Positions 47,897 to 57,566 of a DNA stretch of 64,000 nt are shown here, piece by piece (the first letter of the stretch is position 1; every line of letters starts with the position of its first letter). The notes below the pieces were generated by a model, which made no database searches, was not told where the DNA came from, and saw only the letters and a program-made list of their open reading frames with translations. The stretch lies in the sequence record NC_031927.1; one strand, 5' to 3'. A program made the translations under genes and the position numbers.

Positions 47897-50800
47897 ATGG
47901 CATTATTTTATCAGTCAGGCAGAGTAAGTAGATTCGCAGTAGGTACACCTGGGTTTTCAACCAACAGGGACCTAACTCTTAATGTGTCTGGCGCTATTGG
48001 TATTGAAACTACTAAACCTAGGGGGAGCATTGATACTCCAGAGATTAGTATTAGAGGACCAATTATTGACTCAGGAATCAATACAGGTGGTTTAGGATAT
48101 TTCTTATCACAGGATGTAGAAGGTGTTAAGTGGGTTGCTGCTTCACCAGAAGACTTAACATTTATTAGAGTATTTGAAGATAATGTACAGGTTGGCGTTA
48201 GTTCCTTCAGTGGACTAAACTTCATATCAAATGACTCTTCATTATTTGATATTAAAGAAAGTCCAATTGGTCCCAATATTGCGGACATTAATTTTAATAC
48301 ATACTGGATTAGAACCGAGTATGGTAATAACGCAGGTATTTCAACTGGCTATGGACCAGACGGCACCTATGCTTCCCTCCCTGGTTATGGAACCAGCGAA
48401 GCAGTAGGTGTTACTTCTGTTGGTATTGGTACAGACAATCCACAAGATGACTTCCAAGTTGGTATTGGATCCACTGGTGTTACTATCAATGGACCTGAAG
48501 GTAAGCTAGAAGCAGAAATTATTAAAGCCAAGAACCTTGAGCTTGATGGTAATATTACTGTTAGATCACTAGTTGTTGATCCAGGTATTGCTACATTCCG
48601 TGGAAATATTGATGCTCAAGGTATCTCTAGCTTCACTGGGGATGTTATAGCTGGGTTCGCTACTATACAGGAGCTATATGTAAATGATTTAGAGGTTGAA
48701 TTATTCAGGGCAGGTGTATCAACATTAGGTTTTGGACAATCGGCATCTTCATTTACTATTGTAGAGAATAGTTTAGAGGTTCAGGGTGCTATTGGTACAT
48801 TTATCAATGATCTATATGTCGGAAATGACCTTTATGTTGCTGGTGATACATTCTTCAACCAGATCAATGCCGAAAATATTCAAGTAACAGGCATTGCGAC
48901 ATTAAATAATGTTGAAGGAAACACGGGGATCTTCACTAGCTTTGAAGTAACAGGGATCACCACACTAAATCAGCTTGAGTTTAATACGGGAGTAGGTACT
49001 GATTTACAGTTAGAGTCTTCAACTATTGGTGTATTAACAGCGACTGATGTTAGTGCTGGTGTTGCTACTATTGGCTTTGCTAATATTGATGATGCTAATA
49101 TCAGTGGTATCGTAACAGTAACCGAAGTTGATGTAGAAGAGATTGATATTGAGCGTGCCCAAGTAGGCATCCTAACAATCACTGAGGGTCTATCAGTAAC
49201 TGGTACCAGTACCTTTGTTGGTCTAGTAACCGTAACTGGCGACGCATTCATTGATGGTGACCTAACAGTTACTGATCAGTTCACAGTACAAGATCTAGGA
49301 GCAGAGAACCTAGAAGTAACTGGTATTGGTACCATTGTAAATCTAGAATCTAATGTTGGTATTATCACCACATTGTTCACAGAAGGTTCTGTTAATACTG
49401 GTGTTGGTACATTCAATGTTGTTGAAGCCAATGATATTCAGTCAGGCACTGGTACTATTGGTGGTGTTGGCTTTGAGTCTGGTAGGCTAGAGGGAACTGA
49501 ACTAGATTTTGATATTGGTCGCATCGGTATTCTAACTGGTGACCTACTCAGTTATGGTATTGGTACATTTAGAGATAGGCTAGACAGCCCAGGCATCTCT
49601 AATATTGCCGTTGCTATTGGTAATACTCTAAACTATGATAGCACATCACAGATTAATGGTGTTACATTTGGTGATGAGTTAGTAGATATATTCAATAGAG
49701 ACCTAAGAGTAACTGGCATAACAACCTTTACTGGTGTGGGTACATTCGGATCAGATCTATATGTAAAAGAAGATCTATTTGTTGGTGGTGAACTAAGTTT
49801 TGAACAACTAACAGGTACCAACCTACAGGTTCTAGGTATCGCAACAGTTAATCAACTAGATCTAAACACAGGTATTGGTACCTTCCTAGACCTAGAGTTC
49901 CTACAAGTTGGTGTTGCTACTATCACCAACCTACTAGGAACGATCTCAACAATCACCAGAATGGACTCTGGTACTGTTGCTGTTACTACTGATCCAGGTA
50001 AATATCCAACATCAGACGGTCAGTTCTATGCTGATAGATCATTCATTGAATTTTCTAATGCCCTTGATAGTCGCACCACAGACTTTGTTGCTAGAGAAAC
50101 AGCAGACATCCAAGGTACATTAGAAGTTGTTGGTCTATCAACATTCGATTCTGATATTGATGTAAACGCAGATATCAATGTATCTGGTCTAACTACAACC
50201 AACTTCCTATTCGCTGGCGTAGGTACAATCCTACTATTAGATACAGACTTCATTGACTCTGATGAGATCAACGCAGGTATCATTACAACCCAAGATTTAG
50301 TTGTTACAGGTTCTGCTGACTTCCAAGGAGATGTTGTTGTAGACATCGGTGGTACAGCTAATATCACCAACGCAAACATTGGGTTCGCTAGCGTCACTGA
50401 GGAGGTCGTAGGAACCTCTACAGTAGGCTTCTTGAGTGCTACTGATGCGAACATCGGCGTAGCAACTGTCGGGCTTCTAAGCGCCACAGATGCAGAGATA
50501 GAAGACCTTGAGGTTAATACATTCCGTGCTGGTATTGCTACGGTAGGCTTCGGTTCATTCGGCACTGATCCAAATGAAGGTTCCCTATATGTAACGGGTA
50601 TCAATACATTTGTTGGCTTCACTACATTCACTGGAGAGGTTTATGTTGATGGTGACCTAACAGTATCAGGTATTACAACATTCAAGCAGTTGGATGCGGA
50701 ACAATCACAGATTGGTATCCTAACCACCAAGACTCTACTAGATTCTAATGGTCTAATCGACGCAGAGAATGTTGCTATCAGCACAAACCTAACAGTTTCT

Positions 50801-53800
50801 GGTCTAACAACTCTAACTGGATTCACTACTACTAGTGATGTTATCGTTGGCGGTGGACTAACAGTTGTTGGTGATACAACATTCCTAGGAATTGTATCTA
50901 TTACTGATACATTATTCGTCAACCAGGAAATCACTGGTATTGCTACTGTAAACAACCTCAACTTCAATGTTGGTGTTGGTTCTACGTTGTCTGTAGGCTT
51001 CCTCACTGCTACTGACCTATATGTTGCTGGGGTTTCTACCTTCGTTGGTGTAGGCACCTTCCAGAACGACCTATACGTCTCTAAAGACCTCTTTGTTGAG
51101 CGTAATATTGTAGCTGCTGCTATCTCCGCAGAGAACTACTTTGCTAGTGGCGTATCAACATTCAGTAATACTATTATTGATGGGGCACTTGGCGTTACTA
51201 GCTCTGTTGGTATTGCTAAAACTCTTATTGTTGGTGGTGATGTAGTTGTTGGTGGTGGTATTACTTTTGAGGGTGATACCGAACTAATAGGTAACGTTAA
51301 TGTCCTAGGTATCGCAACATTCAATGAGCTTAACTTTGACGTTGGCGTAGGAAATACACTTACATTAGAAGACCTCAATGTTAATGGGACTATCAATGCT
51401 AATGGAGCTGGTGTTGCTACTATTGGTGGCTCACCATCCTTTGAGAACCTAACTGTTACTGGGATTACTACACTAGGATTTACCACAGTTCAAGGTAACT
51501 TGAATGTTACTGGTGACTTAATTGTCGGTGATGATATTGTATTTGATGAAGCCACTCTAAGGAACATCAATGTTTCTGGCTTATCATCTCTAAATTCAGT
51601 AGGTTATAATGTTGGTATTGGTAGTACCTTAACTATTGAGAAAAAGCTTACTGTAGAAGGATACACTGATCTAAAAGGTGAAGTAAGAGTTGGTGGAGCG
51701 TCAACATTTGTTGGGTTTGCAACATTCCAAGATGGATTATCTGTTCTAGGCAACCTTAATGTTACTGGTGATATTGTCTCTAGTGATGCAACTTATGGAG
51801 ACCTAACGGTAACAAATACATTAACATCAGACAATAATTTACAGGGTAATATAGGTAACTTCAAAGAACTAACAGTAACTGATGATTTCAAATCCAATGG
51901 AACAGCTACTTTATTTACAGTAGGTGTTCAGACAGTATCTATCTCAACCGAATTATCTGTTAGTGGTTTAACTACACTCACTGGAGAATTTGAATTTAAT
52001 GAGGCTGAAGGTTATGAACTAACAGTAGAGAAGCTCAACGTAAATGCTGATGGTGAGGTTAATCTTCCTGGTGTTGCCTTTACAAATAAGGATGCAGTAT
52101 TCCCCAACCTAGAAGTGATTGGGGTATCTACATTCAAGGGATTCGTGGATGTCAATTCTGATGTTGATATCTCAGGCATTACGACTATAGGGACAAATAT
52201 TAAAATCGATGGTGGTGCTAGAAGAATTGATGTAGGTGGTTCATTTATCCAGGGTGCTAGTGCAATCCCATTCCAGGAAGCTGAAGTTTCATCTGGTAAA
52301 GCTACATTTACAAGATTAATTGTAACTAATAATTCAGATGAATCAACATTTGCTGGTGATGTTGAAATTACAGGTGAACTTCAGGTTAGTTCAGCAAGTA
52401 CCTTTGCATCTATTACTGCACAATCAATTGATTCTATTGGTAGCGTAGATATTGGAGACAATCTAACAGTAGATAACAACCTAGAAGTTAAGGAAAGAAC
52501 TGACCTTAAAGATCTATATGTAAGTGGTATTGCTTCACTAAACGGTGCTAGTTTTGGTGATGGTGGTGAAGCTACCTTCGAGAAGATCAATGTAACTGGT
52601 CTATCATCACTCACATCAGTAAGTGTATCAGAGACCCTTGGGGTTAGTGGTCTAACCACTATGACTGACTTAAATGTTAGTGGTGTAGCAACAATTGGTC
52701 TAACATCAACAACTAACCTACAATTTACTAATGGGGATGGTTATGAACTAGAAGTTTACAGCCTCACAGTTCCTACTGGTGGTTTTGTAAGCCTTCCAGG
52801 AATTCCAGTCAGTGACGGTGGAGCACAATTCTCCGAACTTAAAGTCACTGGAGTATCGACATTCTCTGGTATCGCAACATTCTCTGATAGCATTTATGTA
52901 AATGGTGACCTGGTTGTAGAAGGCAACCAAGTATTCTCTGGTATTAGTGGAGAAGACATTAATGTTACTGGTATTCTTACTACACAAAGTTTTAATGTTG
53001 GTGGGGCATCAACGTTCGTTGGTGTTGGTACTTTCCAAAACGATCTGTATGTAGCTGATGATCTATTCGTCAAGAGGGATCTCTTGGTGGGTGGTGCTGC
53101 AACCGTAGGTACTCTAACTGCAACCGATGCACGTTTCCAAAACGTAATTGTTGACGGCAACCTTACAGGAGCCAGTGATGGTTCAGCCATTATTATTGAT
53201 GGTGGTTCAGTAATTAGTGGTATTGTAACTATTGGACCAGCTTCAATTACATTGAATGGTCTTCCAGGACAAGAAATAATTGAAATTGGAACTGGTAGTG
53301 GAAATGTTATTGCTGGTCTCAATACATTTACAAATGACCCATCCCACGTCAAGGTTGATGAGGGAAGATTCAATACATTTATTACTGTATCGGGTGCGGG
53401 TTCTACTTCAACCTTCGAGGGTGATTTAGATGTTGAGGGGGACATTACTGTAAAGGGTAGTCAAGTATTTGAAGGTGGCGCACAGGCACAAGACTTTAAT
53501 GTTAGTGGTATTACTACAACAGAAAACTTGAAAGTTAATAGTGAATCAACTTTCGCAGGTGTTGGTACTTTCCAAGACAATTTGTTTGTTGCTGATGATC
53601 TATTCGTAGCAAGAAATGCGAATATTGTAGGTATTATTACTGCCCAAGATCTTAATTCTACATCTGATAGAAGGGTCAAAGAGAACATTAAGCCCATTGA
53701 TGATGCCCTCAATAAAGTAACTCAACTTAATGGTATTACATTTAGCTTTATTAATACTGGTACAAAGTCTGCTGGTGTTATTGCACAGGAAGTTGAGGCA

Positions 53801-53941
53801 GTATTCCCCGATATGGTCAAGGGAGATTTCCCCAAGTCTGTTAACTACAATGGATTGATCGGTGCTCTTATTGAATCCGTTAAGGAGCTTAAGGAGCAGA
53901 ACGAGGAGCTACGAAGTCGAATAGAAAAGTTGGAATCTTAA
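47897..53941 (+). CDS. Long fibre protein (2014 aa) with C-terminal Peptidase_S74 intramolecular chaperone
   Basis: G(I/V)(A/S/G)T(F/I) repeats; NSTSDRRVKENI...AGVIAQEVE...VNYNGLIGALIESVKEL. Confidence 0.92.
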   Translation: MALFYQSGRVSRFAVGTPGFSTNRDLTLNVSGAIGIETTKPRGSIDTPEISIRGPIIDSGINTGGLGYFLSQDVEGVKWVAASPEDLTFIRVFEDNVQVGVSSFSGLNFISNDSSLFDIKESPIGPNIADINFNTYWIRTEYGNNAGISTGYGPDGTYASLPGYGTSEAVGVTSVGIGTDNPQDDFQVGIGSTGVTINGPEGKLEAEIIKAKNLELDGNITVRSLVVDPGIATFRGNIDAQGISSFTGDVIAGFATIQELYVNDLEVELFRAGVSTLGFGQSASSFTIVENSLEVQGAIGTFINDLYVGNDLYVAGDTFFNQINAENIQVTGIATLNNVEGNTGIFTSFEVTGITTLNQLEFNTGVGTDLQLESSTIGVLTATDVSAGVATIGFANIDDANISGIVTVTEVDVEEIDIERAQVGILTITEGLSVTGTSTFVGLVTVTGDAFIDGDLTVTDQFTVQDLGAENLEVTGIGTIVNLESNVGIITTLFTEGSVNTGVGTFNVVEANDIQSGTGTIGGVGFESGRLEGTELDFDIGRIGILTGDLLSYGIGTFRDRLDSPGISNIAVAIGNTLNYDSTSQINGVTFGDELVDIFNRDLRVTGITTFTGVGTFGSDLYVKEDLFVGGELSFEQLTGTNLQVLGIATVNQLDLNTGIGTFLDLEFLQVGVATITNLLGTISTITRMDSGTVAVTTDPGKYPTSDGQFYADRSFIEFSNALDSRTTDFVARETADIQGTLEVVGLSTFDSDIDVNADINVSGLTTTNFLFAGVGTILLLDTDFIDSDEINAGIITTQDLVVTGSADFQGDVVVDIGGTANITNANIGFASVTEEVVGTSTVGFLSATDANIGVATVGLLSATDAEIEDLEVNTFRAGIATVGFGSFGTDPNEGSLYVTGINTFVGFTTFTGEVYVDGDLTVSGITTFKQLDAEQSQIGILTTKTLLDSNGLIDAENVAISTNLTVSGLTTLTGFTTTSDVIVGGGLTVVGDTTFLGIVSITDTLFVNQEITGIATVNNLNFNVGVGSTLSVGFLTATDLYVAGVSTFVGVGTFQNDLYVSKDLFVERNIVAAAISAENYFASGVSTFSNTIIDGALGVTSSVGIAKTLIVGGDVVVGGGITFEGDTELIGNVNVLGIATFNELNFDVGVGNTLTLEDLNVNGTINANGAGVATIGGSPSFENLTVTGITTLGFTTVQGNLNVTGDLIVGDDIVFDEATLRNINVSGLSSLNSVGYNVGIGSTLTIEKKLTVEGYTDLKGEVRVGGASTFVGFATFQDGLSVLGNLNVTGDIVSSDATYGDLTVTNTLTSDNNLQGNIGNFKELTVTDDFKSNGTATLFTVGVQTVSISTELSVSGLTTLTGEFEFNEAEGYELTVEKLNVNADGEVNLPGVAFTNKDAVFPNLEVIGVSTFKGFVDVNSDVDISGITTIGTNIKIDGGARRIDVGGSFIQGASAIPFQEAEVSSGKATFTRLIVTNNSDESTFAGDVEITGELQVSSASTFASITAQSIDSIGSVDIGDNLTVDNNLEVKERTDLKDLYVSGIASLNGASFGDGGEATFEKINVTGLSSLTSVSVSETLGVSGLTTMTDLNVSGVATIGLTSTTNLQFTNGDGYELEVYSLTVPTGGFVSLPGIPVSDGGAQFSELKVTGVSTFSGIATFSDSIYVNGDLVVEGNQVFSGISGEDINVTGILTTQSFNVGGASTFVGVGTFQNDLYVADDLFVKRDLLVGGAATVGTLTATDARFQNVIVDGNLTGASDGSAIIIDGGSVISGIVTIGPASITLNGLPGQEIIEIGTGSGNVIAGLNTFTNDPSHVKVDEGRFNTFITVSGAGSTSTFEGDLDVEGDITVKGSQVFEGGAQAQDFNVSGITTTENLKVNSESTFAGVGTFQDNLFVADDLFVARNANIVGIITAQDLNSTSDRRVKENIKPIDDALNKVTQLNGITFSFINTGTKSAGVIAQEVEAVFPDMVKGDFPKSVNYNGLIGALIESVKELKEQNEELRSRIEKLES

Positions 53942-53959
53942 GTTGGATAAATAGTAATT

Positions 53960-53983
53960 AAGGCTATACTATAGCCTTTTTTT
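53960..53983 (+). terminator. Rho-independent terminator
   Basis: AAGGCTAT-ACT-ATAGCCTT plus T-tract. Confidence 0.8.
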
Positions 53984-54024
53984 GCGCGTACAAGAAGACT
54001 ATAAACTAAGAGGAAAAAAAACTA

Positions 54025-56094
54025 ATGGCATACCAAATTAAAGGTGGTGTTATTATTAATGACGATAGAGCCCTTATTGGCGTTAGTACTGCTGGTATTA
54101 ACACCGCTCTATACGTTGGTGATTCAGTCGCTAATCTAATAACATTAGACGGCGAAACGGGTAATATAGATGTAAGTGGAACTTCAACCTTAGATGGTGA
54201 CGTTACACTTGGTGGAAATCTCAGCTTTGTTGGCGCAACTGCTGGCGAATCTGTAAATGGAATTACAACTGATATTAGTGTAAGTGCTAGTGCTACTGAT
54301 CTAGTAACAGCAGAAGGCATTAGGACATATGTTGTAGATCAGATTGCTGAAACTGGAGGAACTCTAAACTTCGGTGGTGATAGTGGATCTGGTGCTGTTG
54401 ATCTAAGCAGCCAAACTTTCTCAATTGAAGGTACTAACCTAGAAATTGAGACTTCTGCGGTCAACCAGACTCTAACAATCGGTCTAACCAACGAGGTTGC
54501 TATTGCCGGTTCTATGACCGCAAATAAGTACTACGGTGATGGCTCTGAACTAACAGGCATTACTGGTAGTAACGTTAATCTAGATGGTACTGATCAGTCA
54601 TTCAATAGCTTAGTAATTACTGAGACTGTTGGTTATGGATTGACTGTTGATAATGATGCCCAGATCAAGGGCAACCTAGTAATGGTTGGGCAGATCCACG
54701 GTCCTTCCGAGTTTGTTATTGACCCAGAAGTAATTGGGAACAATACTGGTACTGTTATTATTAGGGGTGACCTAGTTGTAGAAGGTACTGAATTCATTAT
54801 TAATTCAGACACACTACAAATTGCTGATAAGCAAATTGGTCTAGCAACAAATGTTACCAATGCTGCTCTATTAGAAGATTCTGGTATCACCATCGGTGAG
54901 CCTGGATCCGCTGTTGAGCAATCATTCTTGTGGGACTTCTCATCCCAGTCATTCCAGTCATCCGCTGGTCTTGGCGTAACTGATGGTGGTGGATTCTATG
55001 CTGGGGATACTGAAATCCTATCATTAGAAACCTTAGGTTCCACGGTAGTCAACTCATCACTAACAAGTGTTGGTACTCTAACTGACCTAACTGTTACTGG
55101 TGATATCAATGCTAACGGCAATATCGTTGGTGATAGTGCTACTAATATCTCTGGTATTAATAGTGTAACTGCTACTGATTTCTATGGTAGTGGTGCTGGT
55201 CTAACTGGTATTAATGCTGGTTCAGTTGATCTAACTGGAACTGATCAGAACTTCAGAAGCTTGCAGCTATCTGGTGTTGGTGTTGCTCTAACAGTAACCA
55301 ACGATGCTGAGATTGGTAATAATCTAACTGTTGATGGAGACATCACATTAGGTGGAGATATTCTACCAGATTCCCCAGGCACTGGTTCCGTTGGAAAAAC
55401 AACTGATCGTTTCCTTGTCGTTGCTGCTACTGGCGGTGACTTCACACAAGCCGATATCGCTTCGGTTAATGTTTCAGGAGTATCCACTCTAACTGGCAAT
55501 GTTGAACTAGGGGCACAGCTAACCTTCACTGGTAGTGACGCTGATGAGTTCGTTTCTGGTATCACAACCAGTCTCGATGAGTCCGCTGGTGCCAATGAGA
55601 TTGCAACTGCTGAAGGCATCAAGGACTATGTTGATGCTCAGATTGGTGGTGGTGGTTCTGTCCAGGCAGCAACAATCGCAGTTGCTGATAACCAGGATAA
55701 CGTAGAATATTCAGTGCCTTTCGCTAGTGCTACTGCTGCTAATGCAAGTCTATATTCAGACTCAACCCAACTTAAGTACAATCCTTCAACTGGTCTTCTA
55801 GTTGCACAGGATTTCAACTCACTCTCCGACATCCGCTTCAAGGATAACGTAGAGACCATTGACGGTGCAGTAGCCAAGCTACAGCAACTACGTGGTGTTG
55901 AGTTCGATTGGAAGCACTCACCAGGTTCATCTGTTGGTGTTATCGCTCAAGAGGTTAAGGAGGTTTATCCTCAACTAGTAACCGAAGGCGAAGAGAAGAT
56001 CACTGTTAACTATAACGGTTTGGTTGGTCTACTCATTCAGGCTGTTAAGGAACAGGCTGATGAAATCGCTGCTCTAAAAGAGAAGCTAGGTTGA
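54025..56094 (+). CDS. Fibre protein (689 aa) with Peptidase_S74 chaperone
   Basis: NSLSDIRFKDNV...GVIAQEV...VNYNGLVGLLIQAVKE. Confidence 0.92.
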   Translation: MAYQIKGGVIINDDRALIGVSTAGINTALYVGDSVANLITLDGETGNIDVSGTSTLDGDVTLGGNLSFVGATAGESVNGITTDISVSASATDLVTAEGIRTYVVDQIAETGGTLNFGGDSGSGAVDLSSQTFSIEGTNLEIETSAVNQTLTIGLTNEVAIAGSMTANKYYGDGSELTGITGSNVNLDGTDQSFNSLVITETVGYGLTVDNDAQIKGNLVMVGQIHGPSEFVIDPEVIGNNTGTVIIRGDLVVEGTEFIINSDTLQIADKQIGLATNVTNAALLEDSGITIGEPGSAVEQSFLWDFSSQSFQSSAGLGVTDGGGFYAGDTEILSLETLGSTVVNSSLTSVGTLTDLTVTGDINANGNIVGDSATNISGINSVTATDFYGSGAGLTGINAGSVDLTGTDQNFRSLQLSGVGVALTVTNDAEIGNNLTVDGDITLGGDILPDSPGTGSVGKTTDRFLVVAATGGDFTQADIASVNVSGVSTLTGNVELGAQLTFTGSDADEFVSGITTSLDESAGANEIATAEGIKDYVDAQIGGGGSVQAATIAVADNQDNVEYSVPFASATAANASLYSDSTQLKYNPSTGLLVAQDFNSLSDIRFKDNVETIDGAVAKLQQLRGVEFDWKHSPGSSVGVIAQEVKEVYPQLVTEGEEKITVNYNGLVGLLIQAVKEQADEIAALKEKLG

Positions 56095-56100
56095 TATATT

Positions 56101-56123
56101 AGGAACCTTCGGGTTCCTTTTTT
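56101..56123 (+). terminator. Rho-independent terminator
   Basis: AGGAACC-TTCG-GGTTCCT plus T-tract (UUCG tetraloop). Confidence 0.88.
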
Positions 56124-56299
56124 ATAAATAACATTGGGTGTCTCCCACCCGTGTTGTTGGTAAGACTACAACTACCCTTAGGGGTTTTTTTATGCTTAAA
56201 AATAGAAATCTTAATGTGTATAAATATAGATGAATTGAAACAAAGCTACATATAATTCTTCGTTAGTCTTACCAAAAGCAAACACGGGGAAAAAAACAC

Positions 56300-57436
56300 A
56301 TGGCTTTTCTAATTAACGGACAGGTTGTCGTTAATAATAATGAAAGCATTGATGCGTTAGGCGTATCAACATTTGTTAATATTCGTGCCACAGGTGTTGG
56401 TACGATGAGTGAGCTAAGATTGGGTACCGACACTGATGGCTATGGTGGCGTCAGTACTGATATTTCTTCTGATTCTCCATCAACCAAGCTAGCATCTGCG
56501 TCAGCAATCAAAACTTACGTAGATGATAGAGTAACTGGGGGCACAGGTGCTGTCAGCTTGAATATTATTGGTGATACTGGAACTGATTCAGTAAACCTAT
56601 CCAGTGGCAATCTAACTTTCAGTGGTACTACCAATGAAATTGAGACAGCAGTAACAAACGACGTAGTAACATTTAGTTTACCTGATGATGTTACTATTGG
56701 TAATAATCTAACTGTAACCACAGACTTGGATGTTAGTGGGAGCTTCAGCTTCGACGGTGGTGGTCAGTCTGTAGATGCTATCTCTGATGACATCACATCA
56801 GCCGCTCTATCAACCGAGATACCTACAGCTAACGCTGTTAAGAGCTACGTTGACTCAACCATAGACGGTTCTAACAACCTAGCTTTCAGTGGAGACAGTG
56901 GAACTAATGGTGACATCGACCTAGCTGCCAGTGAAGTTCTTGACTTCCAAGGTACAACTAACCAGATCGAAACCGTTTCTGATGGTGCCCAGCAAATCAC
57001 CTTTAGCCTAGCTAACGACACCGACATTGTAACCAGCCTAACCGTTGGTGCGACTCTTGGTGCTGCTGGTGGAGACATCCTAGAAGCATCTGCTACTGCT
57101 GCTGGTGGTGGCATCGGTGTAGCTATTGCTGGTGATCTAAACGTCACTGGTAACGTAGACTCCGCTTCTGACCGCAAGCTTAAGGAAAACATCGAAGTTA
57201 TCCCTAACGCTCTAGAGAAGATCGAAGCCCTACGTGGTGTTGAGTACACCTGGAAGAGCAACGGTGCATACTCTGCTGGTATCATCGCTCAGGAAGTCCA
57301 AGCTGTAATGCCTGGTCTAGTCACTGAAAACGAGACTCACCTCTCTGTTCAGTACAACGGTCTAATCGGTCTATTGATCGAAGGTATGAAGGAGCAGCAA
57401 GCTCAAATTGAAGAGCTAAAAGCTCAACTTTCTTGA
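56300..57436 (+). CDS. Fibre protein (378 aa) with Peptidase_S74 chaperone
   Basis: DSASDRKLKENI...AGIIAQEV...VQYNGLIGLLIEGMKE; TATAAATA at 56219. Confidence 0.92.
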   Translation: MAFLINGQVVVNNNESIDALGVSTFVNIRATGVGTMSELRLGTDTDGYGGVSTDISSDSPSTKLASASAIKTYVDDRVTGGTGAVSLNIIGDTGTDSVNLSSGNLTFSGTTNEIETAVTNDVVTFSLPDDVTIGNNLTVTTDLDVSGSFSFDGGGQSVDAISDDITSAALSTEIPTANAVKSYVDSTIDGSNNLAFSGDSGTNGDIDLAASEVLDFQGTTNQIETVSDGAQQITFSLANDTDIVTSLTVGATLGAAGGDILEASATAAGGGIGVAIAGDLNVTGNVDSASDRKLKENIEVIPNALEKIEALRGVEYTWKSNGAYSAGIIAQEVQAVMPGLVTENETHLSVQYNGLIGLLIEGMKEQQAQIEELKAQLS

Positions 57437-57463
57437 TATTTCTATTATAGCACAGATTGGGAC

Positions 57464-57492
57464 TTGACAAAGGTCTCTAAATCGACTACAAT
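57464..57492 (+). promoter_or_regulatory. sigma70-type promoter
   Basis: TTGACA-N17-TACAAT. Confidence 0.8.
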
Positions 57493-57566
57493 CAGCCTTG
57501 TCGAGGTTGATAAGACACTCTAAGTACTTAGAGATTAATAGAGGGACCTCTTTAGGTCCCTTTTTT
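57493..57566 (+). ncRNA. Candidate ~70-nt small RNA
   Basis: Bounded by a promoter and a terminator (AGGGACC-N6-GGTCCCT-T6). Contains two hairpins; the 5' part is duplicated at 3020-3057. Confidence 0.5.

What the first reader, a model, noticed from the sequence alone, without database searches (positions are those of the whole stretch)
56123..56302. Tiny late transcript complementary to the ribosome-binding leader of the next fibre gene
SEEN: TATAAATA (56123), then a ~60-nt hairpin-containing segment, then a terminator-like ACCCTTAGGGGTTTTTTT (56174-56191). A second TATAAATA (56219) precedes the gene at 56300. The short segment carries CCCGTGTT (56148-55) and TTGGTAAGACTA (56157-68). These are exact reverse complements of AACACGGG (56281-88, covering the GGGG SD region) and TAGTCTTACCAA (56264-75), in the correct antiparallel order. 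INFERENCE: either a trans-acting antisense sRNA silencing the third fibre, or, on read-through, a long-range hairpin occluding its RBS. This would be a switch for receptor-binding-protein expression.
Basis: partly seen in the sequence, partly recalled or inferred. Interest (0 to 1): 0.7.

Follow-up and report, generated by a model that had tools for sequence, protein, structure and literature searches.

The report
Small late RNA pairing with fibre leader
Just upstream of the third tail-fibre gene, cyanophage S-CAM7 carries a conserved promoter-to-terminator mini-gene for a predicted ~56-nt RNA that is complementary to that gene's ribosome-binding leader. It is therefore a candidate RNA regulator of a receptor-binding protein, but no transcript has been shown.

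Summary
The window is Synechococcus phage S-CAM7, a T4-like cyanomyovirus.

- **Specificity.** The upstream arm (56148-56168) has its best partner in 214 kb of the genome, both strands, in the leader of the next gene: -29.8 kcal/mol against -24.6 for the next-best site.
- **The unit.** Late-promoter motif, 5' hairpin, invariant UGGUAAG, short hairpin and U-run. It recurs in four diverged lineages, with both hairpins kept through compensatory changes.
- **Discrete block.** The unit is missing as a clean block from three related contigs.
- **Trans action.** In one relative (L184) it lies downstream of the fibre gene whose leader it matches, which favours action in trans.
- **New point.** The leader made from the second promoter has its own conserved hairpin covering the Shine-Dalgarno sequence, and the target site sits in that hairpin's loop. 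The sign of regulation is therefore not settled.
- **Most likely reading.** In S-CAM7 the RNA most likely tunes down translation of the third fibre.

No Rfam family matches and no transcript data exist. The closest analogues are the same-strand c4 antisense RNA of phage P1 and the T4 gene e, soc and I-TevI leader hairpins. This is a new variant of a known kind, of moderate to high interest.

The parts
54025..56094 (+). Second fibre-like gene (689 aa), the gene upstream of the unit
   Evidence: ORF. Peptidase_S74 at residues 601-652. Tail/baseplate PHROGs. Annotated as BOW86_gp205.
56101..56124 (+). Intrinsic terminator of the second fibre gene: 7-bp stem, UUCG loop, T-run that runs into TATAAATA
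   Evidence: Hairpin -10.2 kcal/mol. Relatives have a different stem sequence that still pairs.
56123..56130 (+). P1, a T4-type late-promoter motif (TATAAATA). The transcript start is inferred at G56136.
   Evidence: Invariant in all four lineages that carry the unit. Genome-wide strand and position bias of the motif. The phage encodes gp55-like and gp33-like late transcription factors. The start site is inferred from T4 spacing, not measured.
56136..56191 (+). Predicted small late RNA of about 56 nt: 5' hairpin 56136-56150, single-stranded stretch with invariant UGGUAAG (56158-56164), 4-bp hairpin 56174-56185, U-run 56185-56191
   Evidence: Fold. Four-lineage alignment with UGGUAAG invariant. 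Both hairpins kept with changed sequence. Absent as one block in L176, L177 and L181. Single copy in 214 kb of the genome. No Rfam family. No tRNA.
56148..56168 (+). Upstream arm (8 nt, then 1 unpaired G, then 12 nt), complementary to the leader
56219..56226 (+). P2, the second late-promoter motif, lying between the two arms. The transcript start is inferred at G56232.
   Evidence: Conserved as GTGT-N-TAAATA in all 8 leader variants.
56232..56299 (+). 68-nt 5' leader of the third fibre gene, unusually long for this phage
   Evidence: Most TATAAATA motifs lie 24-45 nt from their ATG; this one lies 74 nt away.
56256..56291 (+). Local hairpin of the leader: TTCTTCGT (56256-56263) pairs with ACGGGGAA (56284-56291) and covers the SD. 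The target site sits in its loop.
   Evidence: SD unpaired probability 0.01. Both arms present in all 8 leader variants, with only one-sided or wobble changes. -5.7 kcal/mol in S-CAM7.
56264..56288 (+). Downstream arm: 12 nt, a 5-nt internal loop, then 8 nt reaching the first three G of the SD
56300..57436 (+). Third fibre-like gene (378 aa, BOW86_gp204)
   Evidence: The gene body is swapped between the conserved leader and the conserved S74 end in L131 and L182. The whole cassette is absent in L161.

Best explanation
The stretch 56123-56191 is a self-contained late mini-gene. A T4-type late promoter (P1) would start an RNA at about 56136. That RNA folds into a 5' hairpin, exposes a single-stranded stretch containing the invariant UGGUAAG, and ends at a short hairpin followed by a U-run, about 56 nt in all.

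This RNA base-pairs with the 68-nt leader of the third fibre mRNA, which is made from the second late promoter (P2, 56219). It does so in trans. It also does so in cis on the fraction of P1 transcripts that read through the weak terminator.

In S-CAM7 the duplex is 12 + 8 bp. Its 12-bp part occupies the loop of a weaker local hairpin that covers the SD. Its 8-bp part takes over the SD strand of that hairpin, so the initiation region stays closed more tightly. The net effect would be lower translation of the third fibre, set by the ratio of P1 to P2 output.

Shown: the sequence anatomy, the specificity of the complementarity, and its conservation. Inferred: the transcript ends, the termination, the pairing in the cell and the sign of the effect.
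For: 1. Anatomy and specificity in S-CAM7.
2. The promoter motif is genuine in this genome and the late factors are encoded. NATAAATA is the reported cyanomyovirus late promoter (PMC2984593).
3. The unit recurs in four lineages: A (S-CAM7, L131, L182), B (L168), C (L003) and E (L184). TATAAATA, UGGUAAG and the U-run are invariant, while both hairpins change sequence and keep pairing. The 5' stems are GGGUG/CACCC, GGGUGU/ACACCC and GAGGU/ACCUC. The 3' stems are ACCC/GGGU, GCCC/GGGC, CUCCU/AGGAG and CCCC/GGGG.
4. It behaves as one block. It is absent from L176, L177 and L181, exactly from one TTTTTTAT run to the next.
5. In L184 the unit lies after the fibre gene (2849-2909) while the matching site lies in that gene's leader upstream. 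There is a 9-nt Watson-Crick run, reached by 8 of 3000 shuffles. The pair next to the invariant core is flipped from A-U to U-A.
6. L003 has a second compensated pair, U-A to G-C.
7. Lineage A alone has an extra GUGUU in the RNA, and alone has CAC plus GGGG in place of GGAG in the leader. Together these create the 8-bp SD-covering helix.
8. The hairpin after the RNA is consistently weaker (-4.6 to -8.6 kcal/mol) than the terminator of the gene before it (-9.3 to -15.4), which allows some read-through.
Against: - No transcript, 5' end or 3' end has been observed for any of these phages.
- A 4-bp stem is short for an intrinsic terminator.
- There are only four independent lineages and two compensated pairs. 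Automatic RNAalifold gave a positive (unfavourable) covariation term and misaligned L003.
- The L003 pairing is low-complexity (GU/AC) and not significant by itself: 437 of 3000 shuffles reach it.
- The cognate versus non-cognate duplex energies are not diagonal.
- The part of the initiation region that is covered differs by lineage: SD in A, AUG in C, neither clearly in B and E.
- The D-type relatives keep the 26-nt block that includes the target site without an adjacent unit, so that block has some other constraint, or a distant copy of the unit exists.
- A repressor made from a promoter of the same class as its target has no obvious regulatory input.
Confidence: 0.5

Rival explanations
1. 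Cis-only control of the T4 gene e, soc and I-TevI kind. No functional free small RNA exists. The upstream arm serves only to close the initiation region on long transcripts that enter from upstream (P1 read-through or fibre-operon read-through). Transcripts started at P2, which lies between the arms, lack the arm and are the translated ones.
For: The geometry is the same as in T4: 5' arm, late promoter, then a 3' arm over the SD (PMC3014915, PMC2988022). The read-through RNA folds into the long helix. The hairpin after the arm is weak.
Against: - In L184 the arm lies downstream of the gene, so it cannot be part of its 5' leader.
- P1, the 5' hairpin and the 3' hairpin with its U-run are conserved and lost as one block. 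A bare arm would not need them.
- A strong terminator already separates the upstream operon.
- Both promoters are of the late class, so there is no temporal logic.
- P2 transcripts are not predicted to be open: SD unpaired 0.00-0.01.
Confidence: 0.17
2. The small RNA is an activator of the anti-antisense kind. By pairing inside the loop of the leader's SD-covering hairpin, it forces that hairpin open and frees the ribosome-binding site.
For: - The local hairpin is conserved in all 8 leaders and is predicted to hold the SD paired.
- A 12-14-bp duplex inside a 16-20-nt loop cannot coexist with the closed stem (inference from geometry).
- The predicted SD unpaired probability rises from about 0.0 to 0.24-0.41 when the RNA is added, in all four lineages.
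- In L168 the RNA does not touch the SD or the AUG in the predicted co-fold.
Against: - In S-CAM7 the RNA itself pairs with three of the four SD G's.
- In L003 it pairs with the AUG: unpaired probability falls from 0.48 to 0.01.
- D-type relatives have the same hairpin and no adjacent activator.
Confidence: 0.13
3. The complementarity is a by-product of genome shuffling and has no RNA function. The terminator-promoter block would be a recombination joint for swapping fibre cassettes, like a PeSL, and the inverted repeat a relic of an inverted duplication.
For: - The leader and the first ~7 codons are a conserved flank, with the fibre body swapped behind it in L131 and L182.
- The whole third-fibre cassette is an indel relative to L161.
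- The unit itself is an indel bounded by TTTTTTAT runs.
- Composite terminator/promoter cassettes mediate such shuffling in T4-like phages (PMC4122927, PMC2839356).
Against: - It is single-copy in 214 kb, whereas PeSLs are repeated.
- The promoter is of the late class, not early.
- Two hairpins are kept through compensatory changes, and two pairs are compensated in the inter-arm helix.
- The 7-nt single-stranded core is invariant. A relic would decay.
- G-U pairs in the L003 helix fit RNA rather than DNA.
Confidence: 0.15
4. The small RNA is real, but its main target lies elsewhere, in a host mRNA or another phage leader recognised through the invariant UGGUAAG. Pairing with the neighbouring leader would then be secondary.
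For: The 7-nt core is invariant even in L003, whose own leader has lost CUUACC. CTTACCA also lies in the short leader of another tail gene, gp021, at genome position 26541.
Against: - No other site in the phage genome approaches the leader site in energy.
- One extra seed match in a leader is within chance: about 0.5 expected.
- Host targets could not be searched meaningfully with these tools.
Confidence: 0.05

Closest known systems
c4 antisense RNA of phages P1 and P7 (immI operon c4-icd-ant)
   Same: Both are small phage RNAs encoded on the same strand as the target and just upstream of it. Both act through short, separated complementary segments, one of which covers a ribosome-binding site. 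The operon layout and the antisense role are cited from PMC8198154, which cites Citron and Schuster 1990. The two-segment detail is from my own knowledge.
   Different: There is no sequence or structure match to any Rfam family, including the C4 family. Here the RNA has its own late promoter and its own terminator, whereas c4 is cut out of the operon transcript. This is a lytic T4-like cyanophage, not a temperate phage. The target is a structural fibre gene, not an antirepressor.
T4 gene e, soc, 49 and I-TevI leader hairpins
   Same: This is also a T4-type phage. A 5' strand sequesters the SD or the AUG. A TATAAATA late promoter is placed so that its transcript lacks the 5' strand (PMC3014915, PMC2988022).
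   Different: The arms are about 95 nt apart rather than forming a local hairpin. The 5' arm has its own late promoter, hairpins and U-run. The upstream transcription is late, not early or middle. The shorter transcript is still predicted closed by a second, local hairpin. In L184 the arm is downstream of the gene.
CfrI antisense RNA of cyanophage S-PM2
   Same: It is a non-coding RNA of a T4-like cyanomyovirus, expressed during infection (PMC2984593).
   Different: CfrI is a true opposite-strand antisense RNA of about 225 nt over psbA and a homing endonuclease gene. The RNA here is on the same strand, is about 56 nt long and is only partly complementary.
sRNA activation of mRNAs whose leaders fold back on the SD (the DsrA/RprA-rpoS type)
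   Same: The target leader has a self-inhibitory hairpin over the SD, and the small RNA binds within it (from my own knowledge; the hairpin itself is shown).
   Different: In S-CAM7 and L003 the small RNA also covers the SD or the AUG itself. Hfq dependence is unknown. No homology.
PeSL terminator/promoter cassettes of T4-like phages
   Same: It is a composite stem-loop plus promoter block at the boundary of swapped genes, and it occurs as an indel (PMC4122927, PMC2839356).
   Different: It is single-copy. The promoter is late, not early. It carries a conserved transcribed body that is complementary to the neighbouring leader.

Membership tests
T4-type late transcription unit | A TATAAATA-type element placed to drive a transcript, in a phage that encodes gp55-like and gp33-like factors | tested here: met
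   Motif at 56123 and at 56219. 29 copies on the coding strand against 3 on the other, almost all intergenic. A late sigma factor and a late accessory protein are annotated.
T4-type late transcription unit | A mapped transcript 5' end about 6 nt downstream of the motif | not testable with these tools
   No transcript data for S-CAM7 were found.
Intrinsic terminator | A G+C-rich hairpin followed directly by a U-run | tested here: met
   56174-56185 plus U7. The stem has only 4 bp (-5.0 kcal/mol), below the threshold of the scan. It is kept with changed sequence in four lineages. Termination efficiency is unknown.
Rfam families, including the C4 antisense RNA family | A match to the covariance model at or near the gathering score | tested here: not met
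   The best hits are miRNA-precursor and unrelated sRNA models at 12-23 bits, against gathering scores of 49-140. There is no C4 hit at E <= 5.
c4-like same-strand antisense RNA (mechanistic class) | Encoded on the same strand as the target and upstream of it, with separated complementary segments, one over the ribosome-binding site | tested here: met
   It holds for lineage A. In L184 the unit is downstream.
c4-like same-strand antisense RNA (mechanistic class) | Released from the operon transcript by processing | not testable with these tools
   The sequence instead suggests its own promoter and terminator.
T4 gene e / soc / I-TevI type cis-sequestration | The 5' strand lies upstream of a late promoter, and the 3' strand lies over the SD or the AUG | tested here: met
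T4 gene e / soc / I-TevI type cis-sequestration | The long, closed transcripts belong to an earlier temporal class than the short, open one | tested here: not met
   The upstream promoter is the same late motif, and the upstream genes are late structural genes.
T4 gene e / soc / I-TevI type cis-sequestration | The transcript from the internal late promoter has an open initiation region | tested here: not met
   The predicted SD unpaired probability is 0.00-0.01 in P2 transcripts of all five variants. This is a prediction only.
PeSL mobile regulatory cassette | Many copies of the same terminator/early-promoter motif across the genome | tested here: not met
   A profile search of 214 kb of S-CAM7 finds one copy. 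The promoter is of the late type.
Structured RNA supported by covariation | Statistically significant compensatory changes across many lineages | tested here: inconclusive
   Both hairpins and two inter-arm pairs are compensated by eye. There are only four lineages, and automatic RNAalifold gave a covariation term of +2.62 on a poor alignment.

The most novel reading that the evidence does not exclude
This would be the first family of trans-acting regulatory small RNAs in T4-like phages. It would be a late-expressed RNA of about 50-56 nt with an invariant UGGUAAG seed that travels with exchangeable tail-fibre cassettes. It would set how much of an accessory receptor-binding fibre is made. It may also have further phage or host targets through the same seed.
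Probability: 0.35. Interest if true: 0.75.

Novelty: new variant of a known kind. Interest (0 to 1): 0.58.

Why it matters
A 2010 review states that no small trans-acting regulatory RNA had been functionally characterised in T4 (PMC3014915). The only non-coding RNA reported there for T4-like cyanophages is an opposite-strand antisense RNA (PMC2984593).

A compact late RNA aimed at the leader of an accessory fibre gene would add an RNA layer to the control of virion receptor-binding proteins in abundant marine phages. It would also explain why this leader is long, structured and conserved while the fibre body behind it is swapped.

It gives transcriptome studies of cyanophage infection a concrete, checkable prediction: exact 5' and 3' ends and a defined partner.

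Tried and rejected
- **Rfam and tRNA.** Rfam at a permissive threshold returned only sub-threshold noise. ARAGORN found nothing.
- **DNA pattern scans.**
  - The promoter-plus-start motif gave 62 viral contigs, of which 59 were chance hits, many inside one methyltransferase-like gene.
  - The P2-plus-leader patterns added nothing new.
- **Protein-guided look-ups.**
  - These gave L170, L176, L177, L181, L182 and L184.
  - L171 has a P2-like promoter but no unit and no TTCTTCGT block.
  - L174 and L175 are distant, with a different structured leader.
- **Cognate versus non-cognate duplex energies.** The matrix is not diagonal, because duplexfold tolerates large loops and lineages A and B share the core. 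It was dropped as evidence of co-evolution.
- **Automatic RNAalifold on four sequences.** L003 was misaligned, so pairs were read by hand instead.
- **Covariance model.** None was built, because a hand-made structural alignment cannot be supplied to that tool. A profile HMM built in a script was used for searching only.
- **Host targets.** A search for host targets of the seed was not attempted. The collection scan needs at least 14 specified bases, at which chance matches would swamp any signal.
- **Small ORF after the U-run (56192-56233).** It was considered as a leader peptide and set aside. The ATG is conserved, but the length and stop position are not.
- **Literature.** No transcript map of S-CAM7 or a close relative was found.
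Full report
**Identity of the window**

The region is 100% identical to Synechococcus phage S-CAM7 (Kyanoviridae, Mazuvirus), a 216-kb T4-like cyanomyovirus. Window position 1 corresponds to about genome position 152,122.

The finding lies between BOW86_gp205 and gp204. These are the second and third of three consecutive fibre-like genes (47897-53941, 54025-56094, 56300-57436). Each ends in a Peptidase_S74 intramolecular-chaperone domain, and each hits tail-fibre or baseplate PHROGs.

The phage encodes a gp55-like late sigma factor and a gp33-like late accessory protein. NATAAATA is the reported late promoter of cyanomyoviruses (PMC2984593).

**The observation**

Every coordinate in the finding is right.

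- The 200-nt RNA from 56131 folds into the long-range helix: z = -3.27, with 0 of 200 shuffles as stable.
- I scanned the 21-nt upstream arm against all 45-nt windows of the 64-kb window and of the first 150 kb of the genome, on both strands. Apart from its own antisense strand, the best site is the leader of the next gene: -29.8 kcal/mol, next best -24.6, background -10.3 +/- 2.8.
- TATAAATA is a meaningful motif here. There are 29 copies on the coding strand against 3 on the other. 26 of the 29 lie outside long ORFs. Most lie 24-60 nt before tail, baseplate, sheath or scaffold genes.
- The second motif lies 74 nt from the ATG, so this leader (68 nt) is unusually long.

1. The second fibre gene has its own 7-bp terminator at 56101-56118. 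Its T-run merges into the first TATAAATA.
2. The hairpin before the U-run at 56174-56185 has only 4 bp (-5.0 kcal/mol).
3. The P2 leader contains a local hairpin. TTCTTCGT (56256-56263) pairs with ACGGGGAA (56284-56291), which is the SD strand. The 12-nt target site sits in the loop of this hairpin.

**Relatives**

No cultured phage other than S-CAM7 isolates has this region. Pattern scans and protein-guided look-ups in metagenomes gave five kinds of relative.

| Type | Loci | Small-RNA unit | Leader and gene |
|---|---|---|---|
| A | S-CAM7; L131/L163/L183; L182 | Present, nearly identical | Same leader; the fibre body differs from about codon 7 until the S74 domain |
| B | L168; L170 (truncated) | Present in L168 | Same 12-nt core extended to 14 bp; no helix over the SD |
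| C | L003 (58% protein identity) | Present, with diverged arms | Same layout |
| D | L176, L177, L181 | Absent | P2 and leader kept |
| E | L184 | Present, but after the fibre gene | Matching leader lies upstream of that gene |

In type D, the upstream terminator's T-run is followed directly by the sequence that in type A follows the small RNA's U-run. The unit is thus missing exactly from one TTTTTTAT run to the next. P2 and the leader remain, including a 26-nt block with the target site.

In type E, the terminator-TATAAATA-hairpin-UGGUAAG-hairpin-U7 unit lies after the fibre gene (L184:2849-2909). That gene's P2-type leader lies about 1.35 kb upstream.

In L161 the whole third-fibre cassette is absent. 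The sequence that follows fibre 3 in S-CAM7 follows fibre 2 there.

**Conservation of the unit**

Across A, B, C and E the invariant parts are TATAAATA, UGGUAAG and the U-run. Both hairpins change sequence and keep pairing.

| Lineage | 5' stem | 3' stem |
|---|---|---|
| A | GGGUG/CACCC | ACCC/GGGU |
| B | GGGUGU/ACACCC | GCCC/GGGC |
| C | GGGUG/CACCC with a 9-nt loop | CUCCU/AGGAG |
| E | GAGGU/ACCUC | CCCC/GGGG |

- The 3' hairpin is always weaker (-4.6 to -8.6 kcal/mol) than the terminator of the preceding gene (-9.3 to -15.4).
- The unit is single-copy in 214 kb of S-CAM7.
- It matches no Rfam family.

This is the anatomy of a small, stable, independently transcribed RNA: a protective 5' hairpin, a single-stranded seed, a terminator hairpin and a U-tail. 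That it is gained or lost as one promoter-to-terminator block points the same way.

**Conservation of the pairing**

| Lineage | Pairing with the leader |
|---|---|
| A | 12 bp + 8 bp; the 8-bp part reaches three of the four SD G's |
| B | 14 bp; nothing over the SD or the AUG in the predicted co-fold |
| C | 6 bp in the loop, plus an 11-bp helix (two G-U pairs) over the AUG, whose RNA strand overlaps the 9-nt loop of the 5' hairpin |
| E | 9 bp |

Two pairs next to the invariant core are compensated:
- L184 has U-A where S-CAM7 has A-U.
- L003 has G-C where S-CAM7 has U-A.

Lineage A alone has GUGUU inserted in the RNA. Lineage A alone has CAC plus GGGG, in place of GGAG, in the leader. Together these build the SD-covering helix.

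Caveats:
- There are only four lineages.
- The L003 helix is low-complexity and not significant alone: 437 of 3000 shuffles reach it.
- Cross-lineage duplex energies are not diagonal.
- Automatic RNAalifold misaligned L003.

**The local hairpin and the sign of the effect**

All eight leader variants, including type D, keep TTCTTCGT and ACGGRGAA. The only changes are wobble or one-sided.

In P2 transcripts alone, the SD is predicted unpaired with probability 0.00-0.01 in all five variants tested.

With the small RNA in cis or in trans, the value rises to 0.24-0.41. The duplex in the loop is incompatible with the closed stem. However:
- In S-CAM7 the RNA itself holds three SD G's.
- In L003 it holds the AUG: unpaired probability falls from 0.48 to 0.01.

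For S-CAM7 I therefore read the effect as a tighter closure, that is, down-tuning. An opening (activating) effect is a live alternative, especially for lineage B.

**Mechanism proposed**

P1 makes an RNA of about 56 nt late in infection. The RNA meets the P2 leader, made from the same DNA at the same time. It pairs first through the exposed UGGUAAG-containing stretch with the loop of the leader hairpin. In S-CAM7 that stretch is predicted in a 10-nt hairpin loop. The pairing then extends to the SD strand.

P1 transcripts that read through the weak hairpin carry both arms and close themselves.

- Shown: sequence anatomy, specificity and comparative pattern.
- Inferred: the start at 56136, termination at the U-run, pairing in the cell and the direction of the effect.

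**Rivals**

- A purely cis device of the T4 gene e kind fits the geometry (PMC3014915, PMC2988022). It does not explain the conserved promoter, hairpins and U-run, the block-wise loss, the same-class promoters or the L184 arrangement.
- A recombination-joint relic (PeSL-like; PMC4122927, PMC2839356) fits the cassette swapping. It does not fit the single copy number, the compensatory changes or the invariant single-stranded core.
- A main target elsewhere cannot be excluded.

**Unexplained**

- Type D relatives keep the 26-nt block with the target site, although flanking leader positions have diverged. Either a copy of the unit lies elsewhere in those genomes, as in L184, or the block has a second function.
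- It is not clear why a repressor and its target would share a promoter class.

**Comparison and novelty**

The unit works most like the same-strand c4 antisense RNA of P1 and P7 (PMC8198154), and like the T4 leader hairpins. It is a member of neither:
- There is no Rfam match.
- It has its own promoter and terminator.
- There is no temporal class difference between the promoters.
- A second, local hairpin is present.

A 2010 review notes that no trans-acting small RNA had been functionally characterised in T4 (PMC3014915). The known cyanophage RNA, CfrI, is an opposite-strand antisense RNA (PMC2984593).

I rate this a new variant of a known kind, with interest 0.58. It would rise to about 0.75 if the RNA and its trans action were demonstrated.

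**Method note**

A profile HMM of the intergenic region was built in a script, for searching only. The short motifs typed into scripts were copied from tool outputs.

Noticed in passing
window 56095-57500, compared with L161, L131 and L182: The third fibre gene is an exchangeable cassette. It is absent in L161, where the sequence after fibre 2 equals the sequence after fibre 3 in S-CAM7. In L131 and L182 the fibre body is replaced between two conserved flanks: the leader plus about 7 codons, and the S74 C-terminal domain.
   Followed up: partly
window 57464-57492 and 57540-57563: A near-consensus sigma-70-type promoter (TTGACA, 17 nt, TACAAT; 11 of 12 matches) lies directly after the third fibre gene. 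It is followed by a 10-bp terminator-like hairpin and then a glutaredoxin-like gene. This may mark the boundary between the late structural block and host-type-promoter genes.
   Followed up: no
window 56192-56233: An ATG directly after the U-run is conserved in all relatives. It is preceded by the G-rich 3' strand of the hairpin at SD-like distance. It opens a 13-20-codon ORF whose length and stop position are not conserved, so this is probably a by-product of DNA-level conservation.
   Followed up: partly
window 53946-53984: GATAAATA lies directly after the stop codon of the first fibre gene. An 8-bp palindromic hairpin and a T-run follow it. This is the same promoter-like-motif-plus-terminator juxtaposition, but with no room for a transcript body.
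   Followed up: no
L179:14447-14690 (S-CAM7 genome 64447-64690, outside the window): A second long non-coding stretch follows a TATAAATA, about 170 nt ending in a T-run. A second ATAAATA then lies 24 nt before another tail-fibre gene cluster (gp121-123). This may be another late non-coding RNA ahead of fibre genes. No Rfam match.
   Followed up: partly
L178:26523-26561 (S-CAM7 genome, outside the window): The short late leader of the tail protein gp021 contains CTTACCA, the complement of the invariant seed, extendable to 9 pairs with one G-U. There are only 11 copies of this 7-mer on the coding strand in 214 kb, but one extra hit in a leader is within chance.
   Followed up: partly
L174:1090-1205 and L175:1090-1205: A more distant fibre gene, with the same MAFL N-terminus, has a single ATAAATA and then two hairpins, the second followed by a T-run. 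The 3' strand of the second hairpin is complementary over 8 nt to the sequence abutting the SD. This may be an analogous but unrelated leader device.
   Followed up: no
L184:1180-1420: In L184 the P2-type leader and fibre gene sit in a different neighbourhood: small unknown genes upstream and a DNA methyltransferase downstream. The leader-fibre-small-RNA set therefore moves between genomic contexts.
   Followed up: no
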